Part shown: positions 3,925 through 58,902 of the stretch, piece by piece | Layout: every line of letters starts with the position of its first letter | Numbering within the stretch: the stretch's first letter is position 1 | Origin: Octopus bimaculoides | Lineage: Eukaryota | Direction of reading: 5' to 3' | Length of the DNA stretch: 62,708 nt | NCBI RefSeq assembly: GCF_001194135.2 | Contig: NC_068991.1 | Location: 13,272,466 to 13,335,173 of the forward strand | Program-made: the position numbers and the translations under genes | Notes under the pieces: model-generated | What the model saw: the letters and a program-made list of their open reading frames with translations, nothing else | What the model was told of the DNA's origin: nothing | Databases searched by the model: none

Positions 3925-4310
3925 AGACCACAAAATGTCCAGCAGCAGATCGGTGTTAATATTAAAGAGGATGGGCGAGAGCGCATCCCCCTGTCTAACA
4001 CCACGCTGAATCTCGATGGGTTCGCTTAATTGTCCCTCCAACCGAGAATCTAGTTGTGCAGCCTTCATACATCCCTTCCACAAGCCTTATTAAGTGCTCG
4101 TGGAAGCCAAGCCTTCGCAGCTCTGCATACACCAGTAAGCGCGGGACCGTGTCGAAGGCCTTCGCGAAGTCTATGAAGGCGATTTCCAGCCGCGATATTC
4201 TCGACCGTGCTGGCCTACCCATTGTCCGGCTGGCAAGCTGCTACAAAATGAATGAATTCTCGCTGCAACCGTCAGCCTTAATGAATCCTCGTTGAGCGGG
4301 ATTCGGGGGA
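3925..4310 (-). pseudogene. Decayed reverse transcriptase of an R2-superfamily (RLE-type: R2/NeSL/Utopia/HERO-like) non-LTR retrotransposon
   Basis: Minus-strand reading AQRGFIKADGCSENSFIL*QL...LEIAFIDFAKAFDTVP...MYEG, then a frameshift to IEIQRGVRQGDALSPILFNINTDLLL. QRGFxxxDGCxEN is the R2-group RT motif. One stop and at least one frameshift. Confidence 0.85.
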
Positions 4311-4321
4311 GTTACCTAAAG

Positions 4322-4619
4322 CAGGGGTTTTCAAACTTTTTGACTTGCGGACCCCTTTATATTTCAGGCTTTACCTTAGGGAATCCCTCATAAACGCTTA
4401 TGAAATTTATACATAAATATTTGCTTAAAATAACATATATTTTTACATTTATTTATTTAACAGTATTTAACAAAATAGGTTTATTGTCAATCAAAATATT
4501 TCGATTAAAAAACATATATAAAATCAAATTGCCCATAAAAAGTATTTGCTGTCCACGGACCCCCTGTCTTGTCCTCGCGGACCCCTTGTGGTCCGTGGAC
4601 TACAGTTTGAAAACCCCTG
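4322..4619. mobile_element. hAT (Charlie-like) MITE, 298 bp
   Basis: Perfect 16-bp TIRs CAGGGGTTTTCAAACT (4322-4337) / AGTTTGAAAACCCCTG (4604-4619); perfect 8-bp TSD ACCTAAAG (4314-4321, 4620-4627). Confidence 0.95.
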
Positions 4620-5672
4620 ACCTAAAGCATNNNNNNNNNNNNNNNNNNNNNNNNNNNNNNNNNNNNNNNNNNNNNNNNNNNNNNNNNNNNNNNNNNNNNN
4701 NNNNNNNNNNNNNNNNNNNNNNNNNNNNNNNNNNNNNNNNNNNNNNNNNNNNNNNNNNNNNNNNNNNNNNNNNNNNNNNNNNNNNNNNNNNNNNNNNNNN
4801 NNNNNNNNNNNNNNNNNNNNNNNNNNNNNNNNNNNNNNNNNNNNNNNNNNNNNNNNNNNNNNNNNNNNNNNNNNNNNNNNNNNNNNNNNNNNNNNNNNNN
4901 NNNNNNNNNNNNNNNNNNNNNNNNNNNNNNNNNNNNNNNNNNNNNNNNNNNNNNNNNNNNNNNNNNNNNNNNNNNNNNNNNNNNNNNNNNNNNNNNNNNN
5001 NNNNNNNNNNNNNNNNNNNNNNNNNNNNNNNNNNNNNNNNNNNNNNNNNNNNNNNNNNNNNNNNNNNNNNNNNNNNNNNNNNNNNNNNNNNNNNNNNNNN
5101 NNNNNNNNNNNNNNNNNNNNNNNNNNNNNNNNNNNNNNNNNNNNNNNNNNNNNNNNNNNNNNNNNNNNNNNNNNNNNNNNNNNNNNNNNNNNNNNNNNNN
5201 NNNNNNNNNNNNNNNNNNNNNNNNNNNNNNNNNNNNNNNNNNNNNNNNNNNNNNNNNNNNNNNNNNNNNNNNNNNNNNNNNNNNNNNNNNNNNNNNNNNN
5301 NNNNNNNNNNNNNNNNNNNNNNNNNNNNNNNNNNNNNNNNNNNNNNNNNNNNNNNNNNNNNNNNNNNNNNNNNNNNNNNNNNNNNNNNNNNNNNNNNNNN
5401 NNNNNNNNNNNNNNNNNNNNNNNNNNNNNNNNNNNNNNNNNNNNNNNNNNNNNNNNNNNNNNNNNNNNNNNNNNNNNNNNNNNNNNNNNNNNNNNNNNNN
5501 NNNNNNNNNNNNNNNNNNNNNAACGAGTCCCTCCAGTTATTATCAGAAGAAACCTTGCCTCCGGGATTAGCGTTTTTGCGTGTCCGCTTTTTCATTTTAG
5601 TAGATGGTTGCGCTGATGTCTGGTGTAGTGCCTGTTGTGGAGAGTCCTTAATTGTTCACGTACCTCCTCCTG

Positions 5673-5913: not shown

Positions 5914-6962
5914 ATATACCCTAATTCAATGAGGAGGTAGTTCAGCTGATTCGAGCAATCAGAATAATCACCTTCGAAAACGACGGTGAACCATTTACTT
6001 CGTATGTCGTATAGTGAACTATATGTAGTTAGATCTAAGGCAGGCTTTTCTTTTCTTTTCTTTTTTTTTTCTTTTTTTTTTCTTACCGTGGGTATTTTAA
6101 ATAAATGTTAGAGCAGAGCATTGAAAATTCTGAAGTAAGAATGAACAATAAATAAATAAATAAATAAATATGAAAGAAGAAAGAAAATGAATGAAAACAT
6201 TATGATTAGACAACAGGTTATGTGATCTGTGATGTCAGCCGGGTGTGATTGGTAGTCTATCTGTGAGTAAGCAAATTGCTGGTGTCATGTTTGGCTTTAT
6301 TAATGAAAAAAAAATATATATACACATATACTAATAGTAAATAAAATGAAATAAATTCTATTCACTAAGTCGCTAAGGTGAGGTGGATATTAGATAGACT
6401 GTTATCAGATCCAGTCTGCATCTATTCGGGGTGGAGGTGGGGTAGGACTAGCTAAGATACATTGCTGCCAGGTACAAAATATGGAAACTAATTTTGGCTG
6501 TTAGCTGTTGCTAATTCACTTAATTTTTATCATTAATAATCCTATTTTAAAATCATATTTCAGTCTCCATTTGTCCCACCCTCCTCTTCTTTCTCCTCTC
6601 TCTGTTTTCTATCTGTGAGTCTTTTCAATATATTAAAAAGTAATATGTATTGCTACTAGTTCAGGCCTTGTGTCTAGGGTAGAAAAGAATATTCATCGCC
6701 ACTACTTGCTATGCTGTACTCCCAGAGTGGCATACACCATTCTATGCCTGACTGGCTCTACTGTAGCAGTACACAGTATGTGGATTTTCAAGGTGAGCTC
6801 TGATTGGCTGCATGCAAATGAGTTCATTACTGGGTTTCGGAACTCTCGAGGGAAAAAAAAAATTTCGCGTGCGGCCCGTCTGATGATGAGTTGTGTCTCA
6901 TGCGGCCCACTTCTCGAAAATGGTTGCTCTTGCCCTAACTAGACAAATGAAAATAAATAGAT

Positions 6963-7173
6963 ACTCTTTACTCTTTTGCTTGTTTCAGTCATTTGACTGC
7001 GGCCATGCTGGAGCACCGCCTTTTAGTCGAGCAAATCGACCCCTGGACTTATTCTTTGGAAGCCTAGTACTTATTCTATCGGTCTCTTTTGCCGAACCGC
7101 TAAGTTACGGGGACGTAAACACACCAGCATCGGTTGTCAAGCGATGGTGGGGGGGACAGACACAGACACACAA

Positions 7174-7214
<41 letters not shown>

Positions 7215-7370
7215 CGACGAGCTTCTTTCAGTTTCCGTCTACCAAATCCACTCACATGGCTTTGGTCGGCCCGAGGCTATAGTAGAAGACACTTGCCCAA
7301 GGTGCCACGTAGTGGGACTGAACCCGGAACCATATGATTGGTAAGCAAACTACTTACCACACAGCCACTC
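6963..7370 (-). mobile_element. SINE family A (tRNA-like head, internal (CA/TA)n, AAGAGTAA tail; possibly a CORE-type octopus SINE)
   Basis: Near full-length copy of the most abundant repeat in the window (ggagtggctgtgtggtaagtagcttgc...ccttgggcaagtgtcttc...gaaacaagtaaaagag). Confidence 0.9.
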
Positions 7371-7676
7371 AGATAGATAAATAAATAAATAGATAAATAA
7401 ATACACAAACAACTTTTATTGTATGTGTAGGATTAATTTAGTTCGTGGGGAGAAGATAGAGGAAGGAAGAGGGAATATCAATTGTTTCTATTGAACAGCA
7501 AGAAATATTTTGCATTGCTTGCTCTCTGCTTTAAATTAGTGCAACATGCATGTGATTTATAAAAGAAGGCTTCAAAAACAATGGATGCTGCCCTGCTGGT
7601 TAACTAATTGTTTTATTAATAACTAGCTGGTGAAGATTCGTATAAACGGTCGATCGATTTGTTATAAATATCTGGA

Positions 7677-8158
7677 TTGGCTGTGTGGTAAGTAGCTTGC
7701 TTACCAACCACATGGTTCTGGGTTCAGTCCCACTGCGTGGCACCTTGGGCAAGTGTCTTCTACTATAGCCTCGGGCCGACCAAAGCCTTGTGAGTGGATT
7801 TGGTAGATGGAAGCCCGTCGTGTATATGGTGTTTGTGTGTCTGTGTTTGTCCCCCCAGCATCGCTTGACAACCAATGCTGGTGGGTTCACGTTCCCGTAA
7901 CTTAGCGGTTCGGCAAAAGAGACCGATAGAATAAGTACTAAGCTTACAAAGAATAAGTCCTGGGGTCGATTTGCTCGACTAAAGGCGATGCTCCAGCATG
8001 GCCGCAGTCAAATGACTGANNNNNNNNNNAAAGAGACCGATAGAATAAGTACTAAGCTTACAAAGAATAAGTCCTGGGGTCGATTTGCTCGACTAAAGGC
8101 GATGCTCCAGCATGGCCGCAGTCAAATGACTGAAACAAGTAAAAGAGTAAAAGAGTAA
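7677..8158 (+). mobile_element. SINE family A copy (3' part duplicated across a 10-N gap)
   Basis: Same consensus in the opposite orientation to 6963-7370. Confidence 0.9.
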
Positions 8159-14776: not shown

Positions 14777-16275
14777 TATTTCTATCCAGGGTCCACATAT
14801 ATATCTTCCATATCTAAATATTCTCCATCTATTCCTCTATTTTCCACCAATGAAAATGCTTATGTAAGTAAAAATTAAACCAAATCTGACACAAAAGACC
14901 TCAATTACTCAATGGTCACCAAATACTTTAAATCTGAAAAGGTCCAAAGCTCATACAGAACATCTCAATGGCCCACCTATAGTTGACCTACAGTGCAGAG
15001 TCCAATATATACATACATATATATATACGTGTAGTACAATTCTTTCTGAATTTTCAGATTTTTTTTTTTTATGCTCGGCCACTTCGTTTTAAATTGAATT
15101 AATATTCAATTTATCACCCTATCTATCTCTCTATATATATATATATATATATATCATAATTCTAATAACTTTAGTGGGATGTCCAAAAACTCAATGAAAC
15201 ACTACCTAATCCATTTTACAATTGTGTGTCTTATTCTTTTCTTGTGTGGTGTTTTATAATTGGCAGTGGCCATGCTAGGGCATTGCGATCTAGCATACAG
15301 CTGATTATATTAGCTTCCTGTACTTATCTCACAAGATGTTTCATCTGATGCTCTACCAATTCTGCCATACATTCCCCCATGAATGGTTTAACTTTTTAGC
15401 ATTTAACCAGCCAGCCAGCCATATCCGGCCTAAATATTCCGTTTTATACTTGGACTAGCCACATCTGGATACTAACACCTTCCCTATAATGAATGTTGCT
15501 GTAAAAATATACAATAACATCATTGAAATCTTGAAGCTATGAGACAAATGCATGATTACTTCAAAATAATGTGAACAATCTTTATATTTAACAGAAAAAT
15601 CTGACTGCTTAAGGGTTAACAAACATATTTTTCTAACTTGTGTTTGCAGCTCGACATATGGGTTAGTGGATGTATGAGAGCTAAGAAGAAGGGGAAGAGA
15701 GAATACAACGCCCATCATCTTTTTACATCCGCTTTCTATGCTGGCAAAGGATGGGTTTCACAGTTCAAGTGAGTTCTTATTGAGAGCTACTTCTCATCTT
15801 AAGGCTTATAAACCATTTATCTGATATTAATAGAACAAAGAAGAGGTGGGTTAAGTAAAATAAACAAATGGGGGAAGGGGGTATATTTGTGGCCTAAAAA
15901 CTGTGTGTATGTGTGTAGTCATGGCTAACAAAAGAAAAAGAGATTTAAGAATTAAAAGAGAGAGGGAGAGAGAGAGAGTTTAAATCACTTAACAAACGCT
16001 AAGTTAGTTAGTTCAAACCAATTCTGGTGCATCATCATCTATGAAAATTTGACAGAATGAATAAATGGAGAAAAGAAAATGGGAACACCCACACTTGCCC
16101 TTTCTTGTTATTATTATTATGAACAATATTAAATGTGTCCTTAAAATATATATTTATTTTTAAACCTGAAAGAGAGCAAGAACACATGCCAACCAACATT
16201 ATACTGATGGTGATGATGATGACAATAAGCATCATCATCATCATTGCCACCATTGTCATTATTCTTGTCAACAGT

Positions 16276-16281
16276 TTTATT
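16276..16281 (-). promoter_or_regulatory. Candidate proximal polyadenylation signal (AATAAA) for SOCS5
   Basis: First AATAAA I find on the minus strand downstream of the stop codon (~310 nt). Usage is unverified; AT-rich DNA yields many such hexamers. Confidence 0.3.
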
Positions 16282-16317
16282 TTATCATTTTCTTTTTTTT
16301 TTTTTTTAAATTCTGCT

Positions 16318-16523
16318 TCATCATCGTCATTTAACGTCCATTTTCCATTCTGGCATGGGTTGGACTGTTTTACTGAAAATTGGTAAAGTGGAGAGCTGGA
16401 CTAGGTTCCAATCTGATTTGGCACGATTTCTAATCACATTGGAACCTGGTGCAGCTCCCCAGCTTTCAGTCAAACCATCCAACCCATCCAGCATGGAAAA
16501 CACATGTTAAATGACGATGATGA
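16318..16523. repeat. Inverted pair of SINE family C 3' tails forming a foldback in the SOCS 3' UTR
   Basis: 16318-16418 and 16432-16523 are reverse complements with scattered mismatches and one indel. Confidence 0.85.
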
Positions 16524-16591
16524 TGATGATGATAATGTAAAAAAAAAGGGGGGGGGCAGGGGGATTGTGTCTGTTTAAAATGTCTGGTCTA

Positions 16592-18115
16592 TTAGAAATG
16601 CTTTTCAGTAACCTTCATTTTGTAATGATAATACTTGAGGAAGTCTTTTAGGGCTAGTGGGAGGGGAAGCTCCGACACTTTGTCGTAAGTGATAAAGCTA
16701 CAGATGGCAGCTCTGCACAGATGCTGCAGGGAGAATGGATAAGTCCTGGTGAGGGGTCGAGTAAGCATTGGTTCAAAGAACATGCAACAGCTGGGGTCTT
16801 TGTAATGTTCGATCAGGCGGCAGACGGTACTGGCTGCAAAGACACCCGGGTCATGGCAGTCGAAACTGAACTTGTGGTTGCACTGCTCGATGCGTGCGTG
16901 AAGGGACCTTCCGTAACGTCGAAAACTGACAGAGAAAAGAAAGTCCTCCTGCGCACTGTCTCGCAACAGAAATGTTCCTTCGGCTTTGTTGTCAAGCAGG
17001 TTCTCTGCTTCGTACCGATCCATGACCCCCCAGTAAAAACTGCAGTTTGCAATCTGCTGCAGGTCAGGCACTAGACAGTGAGTGTATTCGACCCGACTGT
17101 GAATACGCTGATAGGTGTCGCTGTTGGGGGCTTCGTGCGGTGGGTAATCCTGAATGGGTGCATCATTGAAGTCGTCGTCGTTGAAATAATCTAGAGAGAA
17201 CTGGCTGTGACTCCCAGGGTTAGCCTGTAGCGAACAGCTCTGCTGGAACGACGAGCAGAGTTGGTCGTTAGATGCCAATGTGGAAACAGACCGAAAATTG
17301 CGGCATGCACAAAATGTATTTCTGTCTACGTGGTTTCCAGCAACTCTGGAACCACCTTGTTGACCTTCCTGTTGCTGTTGCTGTTGTTGATGACAAGTTG
17401 TATTGATGTTATCAGTGGAACAGCCAACCGAACCCGAGGTGTTGTTGATGTTGTTTAAAGATCCAGCAAACTGCCTGGCTGACATTCGATGGTGCTGCTT
17501 GTCAACAGAACTAAATAAAGTCTTCTTTGAATGGTGTTTCCGATGATGGCGACTCTTCGGTAAACGCAAGACGTTGTTTGTGGAGATTTGGCAAGATGGA
17601 GTCAACAAGAAGTTGGAAGATGATGGTCGTTGTGAACAAGTGGCCAGTAGCAACTGGTGTTCACAACTGGAAAAGTTTGAACATCTGGAAGTTCCAACAC
17701 AGGGTTGTGAGTAACCCATGTACCGGGACTGCTTAGATTGTTTGTCTCGAAATTTGATTGACCAAGGTTTCTTGTGTTTGTTTTTTGGTGGCGATCCTGA
17801 ACACGAGCCTGAAGCAGCTTCCATGCCGACATTTGATTTGTATCCGCAATGTTGGCACGAAGAGGGGCAATCTGTGTGTTTTTTGGTTTGTTCAATCTGT
17901 AGGGAGTCAGACAGGGCATGCTGCTTCAGCAAGATCGGTTCACTACTTATCTGCGAGGAGCCTGAAGTTAACGAAAGTGTAGCAGCTTGTCGCTCGTGGA
18001 GCTCGGCGATACTGACGAGAGACAGTTCACTGCCACAGCAGAAAAATGGACGAATGGGCGATCGATGGTGGACAGTACTTGATTTGTTCTTTCCAGCATG
18101 ATTAAATGTGGCCAT
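16592..18115 (-). CDS. SOCS5: Suppressor of cytokine signalling, SOCS4/5 (SOCS36E-like) subfamily: long low-complexity N-terminus, SH2 domain, C-terminal SOCS box; 507 aa from the first ATG
   Basis: The C-terminal ~170 aa ([69 protein letters not shown]...FEPML...[13 protein letters not shown]...[17 protein letters not shown]) match the SH2 and SOCS-box motifs I recall for SOCS4/5. First ATG is at 18115; the ORF ends in tandem stops TAA TAG (16594-16589). The frame stays open up to the acceptor at 18162, so an upstream coding exon is possible. SOCS4 vs SOCS5 cannot be separated; it is probably co-orthologous. Confidence 0.95.
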
Positions 18116-18162
18116 TGCCCCAGACTGCACACTGGATTGACTTTCACTGGAGGGACTGCTTC

Positions 18163-18907: not shown

Positions 18908-20170
18908 TCATCATCATTGTCGTTTAACGTCCGCTTTCCATGCTAGCATGGGTTGGACGATTTGACTGAGGACTGGTGAAACCAGATGGCTACACCAGGC
19001 TCCAATCTGATCTGGCAGAGTTTCTACATCTGGATGCCCTTCCTAACGCCAACCACTCCGAGAGTGTACTGGGTGCTTTTACGTGCCACCGGCACGAAGG
19101 CCAGTCAGGCGACATATATATNNNNNNNNNNNNNNNNNNNNNNNNNNNNNNNNNNNNNNNNNNNNNNNNNNNNNNNNNNNNNNNNNNNNNNNNNNNNNNN
19201 NNNNNNNNNNNNNNNNNNNNNNNNNNNNNNNNNNNNNNNNNNNNNNNNNNNNNNNNNNNNNNNNNNNNNNNNNNNNNNNNNNNNNNNNNNNNNNNNNNNN
19301 NNNNNNNNNNNNNNNNNNNNNNNNNNNNNNNNNNNNNNNNNNNNNNNNNNNNNNNNNNNNNNNNNNNNNNNNNNNNNNNNNNNNNNNNNNNNNNNNNNNN
19401 NNNNNNNNNNNNNNNNNNNNNNNNNNNNNNNNNNNNNNNNNNNNNNNNNNNNNNNNNNNNNNNNNNNNNNNNNNNNNNNNNNNNNNNNNNNNNNNNNNNN
19501 NNNNNNNNNNNNGAATTAATTAAATAAAAATGAAAAAAATAAACAAACATATTCGTCTACAATACACACTCTCAGCTGATGTATACAAACACCCAACACA
19601 CACAAGTGTGTGTGTGTGCATTTAACGCATTGACTCCTCCTCCTCTTATTTTTAATAAACCTATTCTACTGTACCAGTAATACAACCCTCCTACTTACCT
19701 CACCAACAATAACAAACACTGGCCTTGTATACATAATGCACATGTATACATACAGGCATACATATATACACACACGCAAACACATGTATATGCACACATT
19801 TGTATATTTGGTTCACATCTGGTTAGTGAGAGGATATGCAAGTAACATAACCATTCTCTTGACTGTAACCAATGTAATTCTCACTTCCATCACCAACCAG
19901 TACCACCAATTCTGTTCACAATCACATGCAATTTGCCATTATGTCACAACAATTTCACCCTTCACCCTTCACTCCAGAATCCATCTTCCATCCGAGCAAT
20001 TGCATTACAAAGCAAAAACCCCTTTGGTGCCAGCCCCTGGTTTTATGATTCAAACATTCTGCTTTAATGGGATCTAAATCGAAACCTTTCATCAGAATTT
20101 TGTATTAATTTTATGTTACCAGCTTAATAATACCAAAGTTATTTTACTAAATTCTTCATTAGGGGGTTAA

Positions 20171-22698: not shown

Positions 22699-24168
22699 TT
22701 AAACACTTAACTATGGAACACAATCAAAGACACTAATTTTATTTTATTCTGTTACTGTTAATGGTTACATTGGCAATAATTTAACATATCTTAATTTGCT
22801 GAACAAGAGACGGAAAACTGCAGGAAGCAAGACTTGGTCGTTGGTGTAGTGAGATAATCGGAGTTTCAGGCTACCTGTCACGAAGGCAGTACCTCTGAAT
22901 GGTGATGCAGGATAGATTAGACAGATTCTTTAGCTCCACCTGCATACACTTCAGACCAAATGAAACCTGGGAACTCCTATAGTTATCTAGCAGTTTTGAT
23001 ATTTTGATTTTGTACATCATACTCCAAGAAACAATAACCCGACCCCCGTTTATAAAAATCATTGGATCTTTTTTAAAACGGGGGCCACATTTTTCATTAA
23101 CGAAACACTTTCAAACTTGGAACACTGGTAGAATGTGTCATATAAAACATCTTTTTCTCTTAGTCTTCTTAAAAAAAAAAGAAATCGATAAGTTATTCCA
23201 TGTTAAAGTTGTCGTATTTCTGTAATTTCAACCAATCACTGACGTCCATTCAGCCGATATACATTAAGTGCCGACTACATAAACAAACGATTCTGAAACA
23301 ATTAACCCTAACCCTACGGTTAGGGTTAGGGTTAAAGCAAATAAAACGAAGGTATGGAGATTAAATACGCTTTACATAGCTTAATCAGCCAAAGGAGTAA
23401 ATATAAACAACTGAATACNNNNNNNNNNNNNNNNNNNNNNNNNNNNNNNNNNNNNNNNNNNNNNNNNNNNNNNNNNNNNNNNNNNNNNNNNNNNNNNNNN
23501 NNNNNNNNNNNNNNNNNNNNNNNNNNNNNNNNNNNNNNNNNNNNNNNNNNNNNNNNNNNNNNNNNNNNNNNNNNNNNNNNNNNNNNNNNNNNNNNNNNNN
23601 NNNNNNNNNNNNNNNNNNNNNNNNNNNNNNNNNNNNNNNNNNNNNNNNNNNNNNNNNNNNNNNNNNNNNNNNNNNNNNNNNNNNNNNNNNNNNNNNNNNN
23701 NNNNNNNNNNNNNNNNNNNNNNNNNNNNNNNNNNNNNNNNNNNNNNNNNNNNNNNNNNNNNNNNNNNNNNNNNNNNNNNNNNNNNNNNNNNNNNNNNNNN
23801 NNNNNNNNNNNNNNNNNNNNNNNNNNNNNNNNNNNNNNNNNNNNNNNNNNNNNNNNNNNNNNNNNNNNNNNNNNNNNNNNNNNNNNNNNNNNNNNNNNNN
23901 NNNNNNNNNNNNNNNNNNNNNNNNNNNNNNNNNNNNNNNNNNNNNNNNNNNNNNNNNNNNNNNNNNNNNNNNNNNNNNNNNNNNNNNNNNNNNNNNNNNN
24001 NNNNNNNNNNNNNNNNNNNNNNNNNNNNNNNNNNNNNNNNNNNNNNNNNNNNNNNNNNNNNNNNNNNNNNNNNNNNNNNNNNNNNNNNNNNNNNNNNNNN
24101 NNNNNNNNNNNNNNNNNNNNNNNNNNNNNNNNNNNNNNNNNNNNNNNNNNNNNNNNNNNNNNNNNNNN

Positions 24169-28095: not shown

Positions 28096-28281
28096 ATGAA
28101 GTAGTTGTATGCTGTCAACTTAATGTGATAGTCCCCTGAAGGGAATACTACTACTGTTGGTTAGACCGAGGAAGCTGCACCGCTTCCTGTCGGCCTTGAC
28201 ACATTTCCGACAGGAAGCGGTGCAGCTTCCTAGGTCTAACCAACAGTATCACATTAAGTTGACAGCATACAACTACTTCAT
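28096..28281. repeat. Long near-perfect inverted repeat (75 bp paired, 13-nt loop)
   Basis: 28096-28130 pairs with 28247-28281; 28152-28193 pairs with 28207-28248 (1 mismatch). Confidence 0.95.
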
Positions 28282-43613: not shown

Positions 43614-44125
43614 NNNNNNNNNNNNNNNNNNNNNNNNNNNNNNNNNNNNNNNNNNNNNNNNNNNNNNNNNNNNNNNNNNNNNNNNNNNNNNNNNNNNNNN
43701 NNNNNNNNNNNNNNNNNNNNNNNNNNNNNNNNNNNNNNNNNNNNNNNNNNNNNNNNNNNNNNNNNNNNNNNNNNNNNNNNNNNNNNNNNNNNNNNNNNNN
43801 NNNNNNNNNNNNNNNNNNNNNNNNNNNNNNNNNNNNNNNNNNNNNNNNNNNNNNNNNNNNNNNNNNNNNNNNNNNNNNNNNNNNNNNNNNNNNNNNNNNN
43901 NNNNNNNNNNNNNNNNNNNNNNNNNNNNNNNNNNNNNNNNNNNNNNNNNNNNNNNNNNNNNNNNNNNNNNNNNNNNNNNNNNNNNNNNNNNNNNNNNNNN
44001 NNNNNNNNNNNNNNNNNNNNNNNNNNNNNNNNNNNNNNNNNNNNNNNNNNNNNNNNNNNNNNNNNNNNNNNNNNNNNNNNNNNNNNNNNNNNNNNNNNNN
44101 NNNNNNNNNNNNNNNNNNNNNNNNN

Positions 44126-44156
<31 letters not shown>

Positions 44157-47043
44157 ACAGAATATTCATACGAGGTATGGGACAATAAAAAAAATGTAAG
44201 GAAAGTAAGCGAAAACTTGCCTGGCTTTTTCACACGGAAGAAAGCAACGGCCGTATTTTTACACATCTGCATTCGGCTTACTACGTCGTTGCCAATTGAA
44301 CGAGAGAAAGAGACACAATATATGAATGAATATCTTAGCTAAACAAGCGTACAGGCCGTACGAAGACGGAAAACTGAATGAGTGGGATATAATCAAACAA
44401 GCTTGAATGAAACATCAGCAGTTGCGTGCGCAGCAGCAGCAAAAACCAATGAGAGAGGGGGAATCAAACAAGTACACATATATATATGGGTAGTAGGAAG
44501 AGGAGGACTGAACGAACAAGCACAGACAAATAGTTTTATCGCCGCCCACACACAAAACAAAGACCGGCTCATAACCCGGTCGCTTGACGTGCTAGAAACA
44601 GCAGTTGAATTTTCATCAAATGGTGTCTTGAGGAAAAGTAATTTTCTTTTTTTTTTTTTTATGTTTGAGTCAGGAGAATGATAGTGCCTGTGACCCTCAA
44701 AAAGCATCTAAAATTGATGGGACAGAGGTATAATCTATAAACTATGGTAAGACGCTTGCTTCCCAACTACAAGGTTTCGGGTTCAGTCCCATTGCGTAGT
44801 ACCTAAGGTTGTCAACTCACCGTCCCGGGTCGACCAAAGCCTTATGGGTGGATTTAGAAGACGGAAATTGAANNNNNNNNNNNNNNNNNNNNNNNNNNNN
44901 NNNNNNNNNNNNNNNNNNNNNNNNNNNNNNNNNNNNNNNNNNNNNNNNNNNNNNNNNNNNNNNNNNNNNNNNNNNNNNNNNNNNNNNNNNNNNNNNNNNN
45001 NNNNNNNNNNNNNNNNNNNNNNNNNNNNNNNNNNNNNNNNNNNNNNNNNNNNNNNNNNNNNNNNNNNNNNNNNNNNNNNNNNNNNNNNNNNNNNNNNNNN
45101 NNNNNNNNNNNNNNNNNNNNNNNNNNNNNNNNNNNNNNNNNNNNNNNNNNNNNNNNNNNNNNNNNNNNNNNNNNNNNNNNNNNNNNNNNNNNNNNNNNNN
45201 NNNNNNNNNNNNNNNNNNNNNNNNNNNNNNNNNNNNNNNNNNNNNNNNNNNNNNNNNNNNNNNNNNNNNNNNNNNNNNNNNNNNNNNNNNNNNNNNNNNN
45301 NNNNNNNNNNNNNNNNNNNNNNNNNNNNNNNNNNNNNNNNNNNNNNNNNNNNNNNNNNNNNNNNNNNNNNNNNNNNNNNNNNNNNNNNNNNNNNNNNNNN
45401 NNNNNNNNNNNNNNNNNNNNNNNNNNNNNNNNNNNNNNNNNNNNNNNNNNNNNNNNNNNNNNCGCGTATACATCGGGCTTCTTTCACTTTCCGTCTACCA
45501 AATCCACTCACAAGGTTTTTGTCGACTCGAAGCTATAGTTGAAGATACTTGCCGAAGGTACCATACAATGGGGCCGACACTTATCCTCTTTGTTTTTTTT
45601 TGCCCCTGAAAGGACGAAAGACGAAGTTGGTAACCTCGGTGAAATTTGAACTTAGAACACAGTGAAAAAAATCGGGACATATAGCACGAAGCTTGTTTCA
45701 ATGACTTGAGTTAGGACTGAACACACTGGTTAATGTAGTCCTACACACAAATGACACGATTTACAGACGGATACACCGTCTTAACAAAGAACAATATGAC
45801 ATGTCACAACCAGAACGTCTTTAACATTATGCCTGCTCAGAGACGATATTCAACAACAGCTGGCTTGAAATAGCTCCCAAATTTCCCTCAAAAGACACCC
45901 AACCATCTTAAAAAGAGAAATTAGAGTTTGGAACATAGGTTTGATAATTAAAATTTCTATTTAATTTGCAAAATACTATTACTACTTACGGTGGGGTATA
46001 ACAATTTTAATGTTCTTAGCTTTTGGTCACAACTGTATATACACTATACTTGAAATTACACCAGGATGGTCACAGATGGAACGTCTGTAATCTTAGGACT
46101 GCTCAGTCAGAGCTGACACGGTGCTGAACACTCTGCTAGAAACAGCAGCCAAGTTACCCTCAAACAGTACCTGAATACTACAAAGAAGACACATTGACTA
46201 TATTGTATAAAGTACTATTCTATACTTGAAATGAAGGTGAGATGGTCATGGCAAGAACCTCCTTCAGCAAGAGTTTGTCTGATGAGGGCTGGTATGTGAC
46301 TAAACAACAAAACAAACAAATTTAAGAAACATTAGCATTAACACAAGGATATCTAACAAACGATCATAGCTAAATAATCTGGTCTTTTGCTTCTTGTTGT
46401 ATATATAAATATTTTAAATATGTGTTTTATCTTTCCATCAATCTAGCAATCACACCTACATATCAAGGTATATATCAACCGAATATATATGTCTACGTAT
46501 CTATCTATACAGCCATGTAACGTACCTGCCAATTATATATCTATTCGTCTTTCTAGACATTTGTGTACGTCTCTTAACTATGAGGGAATTGTACATATCT
46601 CCTTATAACAGATTACCATGTACGTACATGCATAGGCAGGTACATATGAAAAGAGAGAGAGAAAGTGTCACAAACACAACTATTAATTTATATCTATACA
46701 GTCTTTATAATCTCACTGTGTGTGTGTGTGTGTGTGGGTGTAAATGTATATACACACACACACACATTTAGGTTCCTACTTGTAGGTCAGTTTGCCGATA
46801 TATCTAACCAATATAGTTATTTAATCATGAATATATATTCTATGTTTATGTAGTCTTATATACTTGAATGTGTGTGTGTGTGTGTGTGTGTCTAACCAAT
46901 CTGTCTATCCACTCAACCTTGTATATACCCAGCAATCTACACATACGTGCACAGCATCATTATCAAAAATTCGTTTTAATGTCCACATATCTATATCTGC
47001 CTCTATCTCTGATGCAAACATATATGCATGTATGTGTGTGTAC

Positions 47044-57061: not shown

Positions 57062-58614
57062 TACCATGACTATGCTAATGTTCTCTAAATTGAATGTAAA
57101 TATCTTTACATAGTTAAGTGACGCATCTAAGAGAAAACAGATGCAAAACCTGTTCTTCTGAAAGTCAATCTCAACAGCTGCTGCAACAATGTGCAAAAAT
57201 GAGATACAGTTTATTTAATATATCAAATTGCATTCCAACTTATAATTTACTTCCTTGCTCGAGAGTGTTGTTATTTTATCCTTCGGCCGGTCCTCTTCTG
57301 GCCAGGCCCATGATCAAAGATGTAGTTAAAACTGTCTTGCATTATATTCAGGTAAGGCAGTGAGCTGGCAGAATCATTAAAGCACTGAACAAAATGTTGC
57401 TGGGGTTGACTTTGCCATTCATTCATTCAGGGTTGATAAAAGAAGTTACCATTTGATGGGAACATAGCTGTTATTACTAGTAGGTTGCTGAGTCGTTTAG
57501 AAGTTTTCTCATTAAATATAATTTCTATTTACTAGTAGAGTAGGTTGAAAGAAAAATCAGTAGTTGATACCCGAGTACTGAACAAAAGACAAGTAAATGC
57601 TTTGTTAGGTTGTTTGGGGTGTCAGTGTTCACTGGATCAACGGGGTAACTAATCGCAGCCAGATGTAAACCCTTGAGGAATAAACATATTTTTTTTTCGT
57701 AAAGAATTAAATTCAACTAAAGATATAGATATTACACGCTTCTCATATCTGTGGGGAGATTCAGAAAATTTTGTTCTGGTGCTTTCTATAAATCTTACTA
57801 ATGGCAAAAAAATATTCAAAATTAGACATACAGACATCCATACATTCATATACAGACACACACATGCACACATGAGTGGTTGGCGTTAGGAAGGGCATCC
57901 AGCTGTAGAAACTCTGCCAAATCAGACTGGAGCCTGGTGTTGCCATCCGGTTTCACCAGTCCTCAGTCAAATCGTCCAACCCATGCTAGCATGGAAAGCG
58001 GACGTTAAACGATGATGATGATGATGATGATGATATATATATACACACACACACACTCACATATATATATACGATGGGCTTCTTTCAGTTTCCACCTACC
58101 AAATCCACTCACAAGGCTTTGGTTGGCCCGAGGCTATAGTAGAAGACACTTGCCCAAGGTTCCATGCAGTGGGACTGAACCCAGAACAATGTGGTTGGTA
58201 AGCAAGCTTATTACCACACAGCCATGCTTGCACCTGTATGTAAATGAAATTAAAGAAACATACATTTATATAATGACATCATGATTATGCTAATGTTCTC
58301 TAAATTGAAACATTGAATGTAAATACCTCTACATCGTTAAATGACGTGTCTAAGAAAAAACAGATGTAAAACCTGTTCTTCTGAAAGTCAATCTCAACAG
58401 CTGCTGCAACAATGTGCAAAAATGAGATACAGTTTATTTAATATATCAAATTGCATTCCAACTTAGAATTTACTTCCTCGCTCAAGGGTAGTGTTGCTGT
58501 TTATCCTTCGGCCAGTCTTCTTCCCGACAGGCTTATGATCAAAGATGTAGTTGGAACCATCTTGCATTACATTCAGATAAGGCGGTGAACTGGCAGAATC
58601 ATTAATGCACTGAA
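57062..58614 (+). repeat. Local direct duplication of ~330 bp (57062-57392 and 58278-58614)
   Basis: Alignable throughout; a third, more diverged piece lies at ~59435-59560. Confidence 0.9.
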
Positions 58615-58902
58615 TTCCACCGAGGTCGATTCATCCTTTNNNNNNNNNNNNNNNNNNNNNNNNNNNNNNNNNNNNNNNNNNNNNNNNNNNNNNNNNNNNN
58701 NNNNNNNNNNNNNNNNNNNNNNNNNNNNNNNNNNNNNNNNNNNNGTCTTCTTCCCGACAGGCTTATGATCAAAGATGTAGTTGGAACCATCTTGCATTAC
58801 ATTCAGATAAGGCGGTGAACTGGCAGAATCATTAATGCACTGAACAAAATGTCTAACAGCATCTCTTCGGGTTTTATGTACTGTGTACTGAGTTCAGATC
58901 GT

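What the first reader, a model, noticed from the sequence alone, without database searches (positions are those of the whole stretch)
16318..16523. Long SINE-derived foldback 68 nt behind the SOCS4/5 stop codon
Seen: two 3' tails of SINE family C lie in opposite orientation and fold into one hairpin with ~90-100-nt arms (16318-16418 with 16432-16523; loop tggcacgatttct 16419-16431). It sits between the stop (16592) and the first AATAAA I find (16276-16281), so it should be in even the shortest 3' UTR. Established: long imperfect dsRNA is the ADAR substrate, coleoid cephalopods edit mRNA heavily, and SOCS mRNAs are tightly controlled JAK/STAT feedback transcripts. Inference: an exapted retroposon foldback may act as an editing, Staufen or siRNA element tuning SOCS turnover or translation.
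Basis: partly seen in the sequence, partly recalled or inferred. Interest (0 to 1): 0.7.

Follow-up and report, generated by a model that had tools for sequence, protein, structure and literature searches.

The report
Inverted SINE hairpin behind octopus SOCS gene
Two truncated copies of a common octopus SINE sit head-to-head just after the stop codon of a SOCS4/5-like gene and would fold into a roughly 100-bp RNA hairpin, but across three octopus species it decays at the neutral rate, so it looks like tolerated transposon debris and not a tuned regulatory element.

Summary
The arms are the 3' ~100-115 nt of an abundant interspersed repeat with a (GAT)n/A-rich tail. The gene is the Octopus bimaculoides SOCS4/5-like gene (SH2 + SOCS box). 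No canonical poly(A) signal precedes the foldback, and the first AATAAA is at 16281-16276.

New findings:
- The two copies are both 5'-truncated, 13 nt apart in the consensus. They abut with no foreign spacer, and the 'loop' belongs to one copy. This favours a single snap-back-type retroposition event.
- The foldback is orthologous in O. sinensis and a third octopod, so it is older than about 34 My. It is absent from cuttlefish.
- Divergence equals the intron/intergenic rate, there is no covariation or concerted arm evolution, and stability has fallen to -73 kcal/mol in the third species, as random substitutions predict.

Best reading: an ordinary, neutrally evolving inverted-SINE dsRNA (IRAlu-like). 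It is plausibly hyper-edited as a by-product. I could reach no RNA-level data, so transcription and editing remain untested.

The parts
16592..18162 (-). Last, and main, coding exon of the SOCS4/5-like gene (O. bimaculoides LOC106867384). The splice acceptor AG is at 18164-18163 and the stop TAA at 16594-16592.
   Evidence: ORF. Pfam SH2 (6.8e-10) and SOCS_box (1.7e-12). Translation identical to P0124/P0125/P0126 from GSSPSS onward. Sequence.
16548..16591 (-). 44-nt spacer between the stop codon and the foldback. It is C-rich and contains no poly(A) signal.
16432..16547 (+). SINE copy A: 5'-truncated, sense on the + strand, so antisense in the SOCS transcript. Core arm 16432-16523, (GAT)n-type tail 16524-16538, A9 tail 16539-16547. 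This is the 5' arm of the RNA hairpin.
   Evidence: Alignment to family copies. Pairing.
16293..16431 (-). SINE copy B: 5'-truncated, sense on the minus strand. Arm 16318-16418, tail and A15 at 16293-16317. Its 5'-most 13 nt (16431-16419, AGAAATCGTGCCA, matching family consensus AGAAACTCTGCCA) form the hairpin loop.
   Evidence: the loop matches the consensus..
16419..16431 (-). Hairpin loop. It is not foreign spacer but the extra 5' sequence of copy B.
16378..16386 (-). 9-nt bulge in arm B. The corresponding segment is deleted in arm A in all three species.
16276..16281 (-). First canonical AATAAA, 311 nt after the stop. It is conserved in O. sinensis and deleted in the third octopod.
16153..16158 (-). 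Second AATAAA, 434 nt after the stop.
44219..44281 (-). Alternative upstream coding exon (VSRMQMCKNTAVAFFRVKKP) of isoform X1. It shows that 18163-44218 is an intron of the same gene.
   Evidence: tblastn. Protein sequences.

Best explanation
The element is an old, neutrally evolving inverted pair of 5'-truncated copies of an abundant octopod SINE with a (GAT)n/A-rich tail.

Origin (inferred). It was most likely created in one retroposition event. The first-strand cDNA of one SINE RNA stopped about 140 nt from the tail and snapped back on itself. This gave a ready-made palindrome whose two outer ends are the poly(A)/poly(T) tail and whose loop is the extra 13 nt of one copy.

Position (shown). 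It landed 44 nt behind the stop codon of the SOCS4/5-like gene, upstream of every canonical poly(A) signal.

Behaviour (inferred). It is presumably carried in the 3'UTR. There it would fold into an imperfect duplex of about 100 bp, with helices of 18 bp or less interrupted by mismatches. This is the ordinary kind of substrate that octopus ADARs hyper-edit promiscuously. Any effect on SOCS mRNA, such as mild repression of the kind inverted SINEs cause in mammals, would be incidental.

Evolution (shown). Nothing in its evolution indicates that the structure is maintained by selection. Also shown are the structure, the SINE origin, the head-to-head junction, the orthology and age, and the position relative to the stop and poly(A) signals. 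Transcription through it, editing, and the snap-back mechanism are inferred.
For: Structure and SINE identity.

Junction:
- The loop matches the family consensus, so the copies abut with 0 nt of foreign sequence.
- Both copies are truncated within 13 nt of each other, whereas none of 24 other copies is truncated in its 3' 150 nt.
- The inverted repetition ends exactly at the A/T tails, and the flanks beyond them are unrelated.

Age:
- The orthologous copy in O. sinensis is L001 83960-84165. That lineage split about 34 My ago (PMC10700109).
- A more distant octopod also carries it (L002-L005).
- A four-point estimate gives only about 0.047 arm-to-arm divergence before that deeper split. The arms were therefore about 95% identical then.

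Neutrality:
- Foldback identity between O. bimaculoides and O. sinensis is 94.7%, against a noncoding mean of 92.6% (sd 3.5). 30% of 206-nt noncoding windows are at least as conserved.
- Against the third species the foldback is 84.2% identical and the intron 83.7%.
- The covariation term is +7, and there is one double change in 74-99 pairs.
- The within-species arm distance sum (0.445) exceeds the cross-species sum (0.411), so there is no concerted or compensatory evolution.
- Observed stabilities fall inside the range of randomly placed substitutions: 13%, 75% and 10% of simulations were at least as stable.

Context:
- The cuttlefish orthologue has no foldback.
- Octopus has an exceptional load of dsRNA-forming loci and of hyper-editing (PMC5625713), with most editing in introns and 3'UTR hairpins (PMC9699675).
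- A second short-loop, head-to-head truncated dimer, from another SINE family, lies in the O. sinensis intron at L001 61028-61340.
Against: - I could obtain no RNA data. Inclusion in the mature 3'UTR rests only on the absence of an earlier AATAAA/ATTAAA.
- Three species give little power. Weak constraint on overall duplex stability, as opposed to constraint on individual pairs, cannot be excluded. The O. bimaculoides/O. sinensis copies are still very stable (-114 kcal/mol for the core) after more than 34 My.
- The simulations assign all differences between the third species and the other two to one lineage.
- No target-site duplication is recognisable, so the single-event origin is an inference from geometry.
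- Two near-simultaneous insertions from one master copy would give the same arm similarity.
Confidence: 0.68

Rival explanations
1. Exapted regulatory dsRNA. The hairpin is maintained because ADAR editing, Staufen binding, nuclear retention or dicing at this site tunes SOCS4/5 mRNA stability or translation.
For: - It is retained for more than 34 My in three octopods, and the duplex is still strong in two of them.
- It lies immediately behind the stop codon and before the first poly(A) signal.
- Inverted SINEs in mammalian 3'UTRs do repress expression (PMC5080714, PMC11263572).
Against: - Divergence equals the neutral rate.
- There is no covariation and no concerted arm evolution.
- About 13-20 pairs are broken, an 8-nt arm deletion has occurred, and dG has fallen to -73 in the third species, as expected from random substitutions.
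- The cuttlefish orthologue lacks it.
- Retention alone is expected, because neutral deletion of about 250 bp is slow.
Confidence: 0.08
2. Same neutral element, but made by two independent insertions of the same SINE subfamily that happen to lie head-to-head.
For: - The family is dense, at about one copy per 5-6 kb here.
- The arms share subfamily-like characters, and some of these also occur in other copies.
- No target-site duplication flanks the composite.
Against: - There are 0 nt of foreign spacer, and the two truncation points are 13 nt apart, while 0 of 24 other copies are truncated in that region.
- No remnant of the 5' part of copy B lies beyond copy A, so this is not an insertion into a longer copy.
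- The arms were about 95% identical at the deepest split sampled.
- A second dimer with the same architecture exists in another family. I estimate only about 0.2 such cases expected by random placement among about 70 copies; this is my rough figure, not a formal test.
Confidence: 0.2
3. The hairpin, or its terminal ~70 nt, is a precursor of a miRNA or of endo-siRNAs.
For: - The terminal part 16385-16466 is a hairpin of pre-miRNA size.
- It gives weak Rfam hits to the bantam and MIR7125 hairpin models.
- Adjacent inverted repeats are a known cradle of miRNA genes (my own knowledge).
Against: - The Rfam scores are far below gathering: 28.7 against 61, and 23.4 against 100. Nothing in the window reaches gathering.
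- The apical region carries substitutions on both arms in the third species and shows no extra conservation.
- I had no small-RNA data.
Confidence: 0.03
4. The foldback is not part of the mature mRNA, because of a non-canonical earlier cleavage site or a 3'UTR intron. It would then matter only as a DNA palindrome or as a feature of read-through or pre-mRNA.
For: I obtained no transcript evidence. The first AATAAA after the foldback is not conserved in the third species.
Against: - Only 44 nt without any AATAAA/ATTAAA separate the stop from the element.
- Octopus 3'UTRs are reported as unusually long, with otherwise ordinary cleavage and polyadenylation (PMC9699675).
Confidence: 0.1

Closest known systems
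Inverted Alu repeats (IRAlus) and inverted SINEs in mammalian 3'UTRs (PMC11263572, PMC4378195, PMC5080714)
   Same: Two copies of one SINE family lie in opposite orientation within one presumed 3'UTR. They are predicted to form a long imperfect intramolecular dsRNA. In mammals such structures are ADAR and Staufen substrates, and they are mostly by-products of SINE density, not conserved elements.
   Different: The SINE family is unrelated (octopod, with a (GAT)n tail). The arms are about 100 nt instead of about 300 nt. The loop is only 13 nt and there is no foreign spacer, whereas IRAlus are normally two independent full-length insertions hundreds of nt apart. No editing, retention or repression has been shown here.
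Repeat-derived hyper-edited dsRNA and 3'UTR/intron hairpins of octopus (PMC5625713, PMC9699675)
   Same: Same organism group and same kind of structure, a nearby inverted repeat of an interspersed element in a non-coding part of a transcript. This class is already described as very abundant in Octopus.
   Different: Those studies are genome-wide. I found no report on this locus, and its editing status is unknown.
L1 5' inversions by twin priming (Ostertag & Kazazian 2001; my own knowledge, not checked here)
   Same: An inverted 5' segment is produced within a single target-primed reverse transcription event. The product is 5'-truncated.
   Different: In twin priming the inverted and direct segments cover different, adjacent parts of the element. 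Here both arms cover the same part, including both tails, which fits snap-back copying of the nascent cDNA and not twin priming.
miRNA genes born from adjacent inverted MIR/L2 copies (Smalheiser & Torvik 2005; my own knowledge, not checked here)
   Same: A hairpin formed by two inverted copies of one retroposon family.
   Different: There is no evidence of small-RNA production or of conservation of a mature arm here.

Membership tests
Inverted-SINE (IRAlu-like) 3'UTR dsRNA element | Two copies of the same SINE family lie in opposite orientation close together on one transcription unit | tested here: met
   Both arms align to the same interspersed family in opposite orientation. They lie downstream of the stop on the gene's strand.
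Inverted-SINE (IRAlu-like) 3'UTR dsRNA element | Predicted long intramolecular duplex | tested here: met
   99 bp, dG -118 to -122 kcal/mol, z = -12.4.
Inverted-SINE (IRAlu-like) 3'UTR dsRNA element | Located in the mature mRNA 3'UTR | not testable with these tools
   Only indirect: no AATAAA/ATTAAA before 16281. No RNA-derived contigs were retrievable.
Inverted-SINE (IRAlu-like) 3'UTR dsRNA element | Clustered A-to-I editing, binding by dsRNA-binding proteins, or an effect on expression | not testable with these tools
   No RNA-seq, CLIP or reporter data were available. Only the general octopus literature applies (PMC5625713, PMC9699675).
Conserved structured cis-regulatory RNA element | Sequence conservation above the local neutral rate | tested here: not met
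   94.7% against a noncoding mean of 92.6% (sd 3.5), with 30% of windows at least as conserved. 84.2% against 83.7% for the intron in the third species.
Conserved structured cis-regulatory RNA element | Compensatory (covarying) substitutions that preserve pairs | tested here: not met
   RNAalifold covariation term +7. Score 0.045 against 0.048 in shuffles, with 333 of 500 shuffles as high. One double change, and 13 pairs broken only. Power is low with three species.
Conserved structured cis-regulatory RNA element | Stability retained beyond the neutral expectation | tested here: not met
   Observed dG lies within the simulated distributions. For the third species, -73 against -64.3 +/- 8.5, with 13% of simulations as stable.
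SINE (non-autonomous retroposon) | Dispersed multi-copy family with a defined 3' end carrying a simple-repeat or A-rich tail | tested here: met
   At least 24 further copies in 157 kb, ending in (GAT)n. RTE-type LINEs with microsatellite tails are reported in octopus (PMC9115989).
SINE (non-autonomous retroposon) | Pol III-type (tRNA-like) head | tested here: inconclusive
   ARAGORN finds no tRNA in the window or in my partial consensus. The consensus 5' end was not resolved, and the arms lack the head in any case.
Twin-priming 5' inversion | The inverted and direct segments derive from different, contiguous parts of the element | tested here: not met
   Both arms cover the same consensus segment and both carry the tail.
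MITE / foldback DNA transposon | Terminal inverted repeats of a DNA element flanked by a target-site duplication, with family copies sharing the whole palindrome | tested here: not met
   The other family copies are solo, unidirectional and longer at the 5' end. No duplication flanks the composite.
miRNA precursor | Match to a known family, or conserved mature arms with small-RNA reads | tested here: not met
   The best Rfam hits are far below gathering and none reaches gathering. Small-RNA reads are not testable here.
SOCS4/5 subfamily (host gene) | Central SH2 domain and C-terminal SOCS box behind a long N-terminal region | tested here: met
   SH2 at 365-443 and SOCS box at 465-499 of the 512-aa ORF. 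The best named relatives are SOCS5/SOCS4-like proteins.

The most novel reading that the evidence does not exclude
The hairpin was born ready-made by snap-back reverse transcription of a single SINE RNA. This would be a recurrent mode of SINE insertion in octopods, seen here in two different families within 157 kb. Retroposition would then directly seed short-loop dsRNA hairpins in introns and 3'UTRs. That could contribute to the exceptional dsRNA and hyper-editing load of octopus transcriptomes, and possibly to hairpin (miRNA) birth.
Probability: 0.25. Interest if true: 0.5.

Novelty: new member of a known kind. Interest (0 to 1): 0.2.

Why it matters
As it stands it matters little. It is one more inverted-SINE hairpin in a genome already known to be full of dsRNA-forming repeats, and it shows no sign of selection. 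It is useful as a clean, datable example. The arms were about 95% identical at the deepest split I sampled, and the element has since decayed independently in three lineages. That shows how long a 3'UTR dsRNA can persist neutrally next to a tightly regulated signalling gene. The zero-spacer, same-truncation architecture, seen twice here, also points to a testable mechanism (snap-back retroposition) for how octopus genomes acquire hairpins.

Tried and rejected
RNA-level evidence. None of these routes gave anything:
- Exact-product look-ups for the window's 507-aa ORF, for P0124, and for three small ORFs spanning the hairpin found nothing. One search used wrong coordinates and was repeated.
- A search with the C-terminal 120 aa returned no octopus fragments.
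- The supplements of PMC9699675 do not mention the O. sinensis gene id.
- The Logan contigs of the third octopod include 740 nt of intron. They differ between samples only by intron polymorphisms plus one C/T difference at the truncated end of L005, in the poly-T run just before the foldback. They are therefore probably genomic and say nothing about editing.
- I could not identify the species behind SRR11869385. The only text hit was an unrelated plant paper.

Cuttlefish:
- There is no foldback, and no significant 3'-flank conservation with octopus.
- I first took contig L007 for a transcript, but it is collinear with the genome. I therefore dropped the inference about cuttlefish 3'UTR length.

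Other negative results:
- Rfam gave only sub-threshold hairpin hits.
- ARAGORN found no tRNA-like head.
- The long 'palindromes' in L001 at 4127-4532 and 58276-58799 are TA/TACA microsatellites and not TE hairpins.

Origins I rejected:
- Twin priming, because both arms cover the same segment.
- Insertion of one copy into a longer pre-existing copy, because no 5' remnant lies beyond the other arm.
- Replication or repair fold-back duplication, because the inverted repetition stops exactly at the A/T tails.
- A MITE.

Full report
**1. Observation**

The minus strand carries a long ORF ending ...[12 protein letters not shown], with the stop at 16594-16592. Downstream on that strand lie, in order:
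- a 44-nt C-rich spacer;
- a T9 run (16547-16539);
- an (ATC)n-like stretch;
- about 92 nt of arm A (16523-16432);
- a 13-nt loop (16431-16419);
- about 101 nt of arm B (16418-16318);
- a (GAT)n-like stretch;
- an A15 run (16307-16293).

The repeat finder recovers the arms as three collinear inverted segments of 77-87% complementarity. As RNA, 16600-16270 folds to -122.2 kcal/mol, against -64.4 +/- 4.7 for shuffles (z = -12.4). The longest perfect helix is 18 bp and there is a 9-nt bulge at 16378-16386. No AATAAA or ATTAAA precedes or lies inside the foldback, and the next one is at 16158-16153.

**2. Host gene and organism**

The ORF has an SH2 domain and a SOCS box. Its closest named relatives are molluscan SOCS5/SOCS4-like proteins. 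The exon translation is identical to the three O. bimaculoides LOC106867384 isoforms and 96% identical to O. sinensis LOC115229012, so the window is O. bimaculoides. An alternative upstream coding exon maps to 44281-44219. Most of the window above 18163 is therefore intron of this gene.

**3. The arms are SINE 3' parts, joined head-to-head without spacer**

A 24-nt core of the arms occurs seven times in the window, against none expected. BLAST with a good copy finds at least 24 further copies in the window plus the 94-kb O. sinensis locus. These copies run in one direction, extend much further 5', and end in (GAT)n. This fits a SINE mobilised by an RTE-type LINE with a microsatellite tail, as described for octopus (PMC9115989). 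I could not demonstrate a tRNA-like head for this family.

Copy A is sense on the + strand and copy B is sense on the minus strand, so the tails point outward. The 'loop' AGAAATCGTGCCA matches the family consensus AGAAACTCTGCCA. Copy B is therefore simply 13 nt longer at its 5' end, and no foreign nucleotide separates the copies. None of the 24 other copies is truncated within its last 150 nt, yet both arms are, 13 nt apart. The inverted repetition stops exactly at the A/T tails, and the flanks beyond are unrelated.

This geometry has three consequences:
- It excludes twin priming, because both arms cover the same segment.
- It excludes insertion into a longer copy, because there is no 5' remnant beyond the other arm.
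- It makes two independent hits unlikely.

The geometry is what snap-back copying of a nascent cDNA during target-primed reverse transcription would give. That mechanism is an inference. No target-site duplication is recognisable.

**4. Orthologues and age**

The O. sinensis locus (L001) is collinear with the window at about 92% identity and contains the foldback at 83960-84165. Four Logan contigs from an unidentified, more divergent octopod (L002-L005) also contain it. Their CDS is 93% identical and their intron 84% identical to the window. In that species arm B has an 8-nt deletion, and the first AATAAA region is deleted. These contigs include intron sequence. Between samples they differ by intron polymorphisms and by one C/T difference at the truncated end of L005, in the poly-T run just before the foldback. 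They are probably genomic.

[quoted passage not shown] The cuttlefish orthologue (L006, L007) has no inverted repeat behind its stop codon, and there is no significant 3'-flank similarity.

**5. Tests for selection**

(a) Substitution rate.
- Against O. sinensis, the foldback core is 94.7% identical. The mean of 370 noncoding 206-nt windows is 92.6% (sd 3.5), and 30% of them are at least as conserved.
- Against the third species, the foldback is 84.2% identical, the adjacent intron 83.7% and the CDS 93.2%.

(b) Covariation.
- RNAalifold gives a positive (penalising) covariation term of +7.
- On the 74 core pairs, 55 never vary, 5 vary on one side, 1 changes on both sides and 13 are only broken.
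- The covariation score is 0.045 against 0.048 in shuffles.

(c) Stability.
- dG of the core is -114 in O. bimaculoides, -115 in O. sinensis and -73 in the third species.
- Placing the same numbers of transitions and transversions at random gives -64 +/- 8.5 for the third species, with 13% of simulations as stable. The corresponding figures are 75% and 10% for the other two.

(d) Arm-to-arm distances.
- Within species: 0.152, 0.141 and 0.293.
- Across species: 0.183 and 0.228.
- Orthologous: 0.196 and 0.121.
- The within-species sum (0.445) is not smaller than the cross-species sum (0.411), so there is no concerted or compensatory evolution.
- The four-point internal branch is about 0.047. The arms were therefore about 95% identical when the third lineage split off, and they have decayed independently since.

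All four tests fit neutral decay. Power is limited to three species.

**6. Context**

Inverted repeats are common in this locus. At least five other pairs with 130-400-nt arms lie within 1.5 kb of each other in the same window. O. bimaculoides has the strongest repeat hyper-editing signal and an exceptionally high fraction of dsRNA-forming loci among 19 species (PMC5625713). In O. vulgaris most editing lies in introns and 3'UTRs, in line with their hairpin content, and 3'UTRs are long (PMC9699675). In mammals, inverted SINEs in 3'UTRs are edited, bound by Staufen, retained in the nucleus, or lower expression independently of dsRNA sensors (PMC11263572, PMC4378195, PMC5080714). This element works like those, if it is transcribed. 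Membership in the IRAlu-like class is met for the DNA-level features and untested for the RNA-level ones.

**7. A second dimer of the same architecture**

In the O. sinensis intron, L001 61028-61340 is a head-to-head pair of 5'-truncated 3' parts of a different SINE family with a tRNA-like head. The loop is 25 nt, part of it apparently belongs to the sense copy, and the arms are 85-89% complementary. It is not present at the orthologous point of the window. My rough estimate is that about 0.2 such cases would arise by random placement among about 70 copies, against the 2 seen. This supports a single-event origin for such hairpins, but two cases are no census.

**8. Verdict**

The element is an ordinary, old, neutrally decaying inverted-SINE hairpin, probably born in one event. 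It is very likely carried in the SOCS4/5-like 3'UTR and plausibly hyper-edited as a by-product. The proposal that it is exapted to tune SOCS expression has no comparative support. Transcript, editing and small-RNA data are what would decide the open points, and I could not reach any.

Noticed in passing
window 6958-8151: Head-to-head pair of near-full-length copies of a second SINE family with a tRNA-like head (reverse complement ...GGTTCCGGGTTCAGTCCCAC...). The arms are about 400 nt and 94-96% complementary, with a 304-nt spacer. It lies 8.4-9.6 kb downstream of the SOCS stop. It would form a much larger and better dsRNA than the reported foldback.
   Followed up: partly
L001 61028-61340 (O. 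sinensis, SOCS intron): Second short-loop hairpin with the same architecture: two 5'-truncated 3' parts of the second SINE family, head-to-head, with a 25-nt loop and arms 85-89% complementary. It is absent at the orthologous point of the window (about 35246).
   Followed up: partly
window 28096-28281: Near-perfect palindrome of about 186 nt (35-nt arms 100% and 42-nt arms 98% complementary) in the SOCS intron. It is flanked on both sides by ATGGTCATAGCTT and absent from O. sinensis, which carries a different 42-nt-arm palindrome (L001 70810-70893) in the same interval. It looks like a young MITE-like insertion.
   Followed up: partly
window 53232-53392/54143-54303, 56441-56604/58061-58224, 36254-36385/37095-37226: Further inverted repeat pairs with 130-165-nt arms (82-91% complementary) within 0.7-1.5 kb of each other, all inside the SOCS gene's intron. 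The pre-mRNA therefore has several other dsRNA-forming sites.
   Followed up: no
window 16203-16248: (ATC)n/(GAT)n microsatellite that is self-complementary and forms a small hairpin just after the first AATAAA. It gives sub-threshold Rfam mir-598 hits on both strands, which are almost certainly chance.
   Followed up: no
window 16265-16292 vs L002 ~2535-2545: The first AATAAA behind the foldback is conserved in O. sinensis. It lies in a stretch of about 24 nt that is deleted in the third octopod, so that poly(A) signal is not a conserved 3' end.
   Followed up: partly
window 17362-17392 (minus strand): CAA/CAG poly-glutamine run in the N-terminal region of the SOCS protein. Its length differs between species: Q7 in O. 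bimaculoides, Q5 in O. sinensis, and shorter and interrupted in the third octopod.
   Followed up: no
window 15850-15949 and 15450-15549: Two 100-nt blocks, 0.65-1.1 kb downstream of the stop, are 98% and 97% identical to O. sinensis against a 92-93% background. They are not significant on their own but are candidate conserved 3'UTR elements.
   Followed up: no
window, 17 runs of N (e.g. 4631-5521, 19122-19512, 23419-24168, 43614-44125): Assembly gaps. Several of them abut SINE copies, so repeat counts in the window are lower bounds.
   Followed up: no
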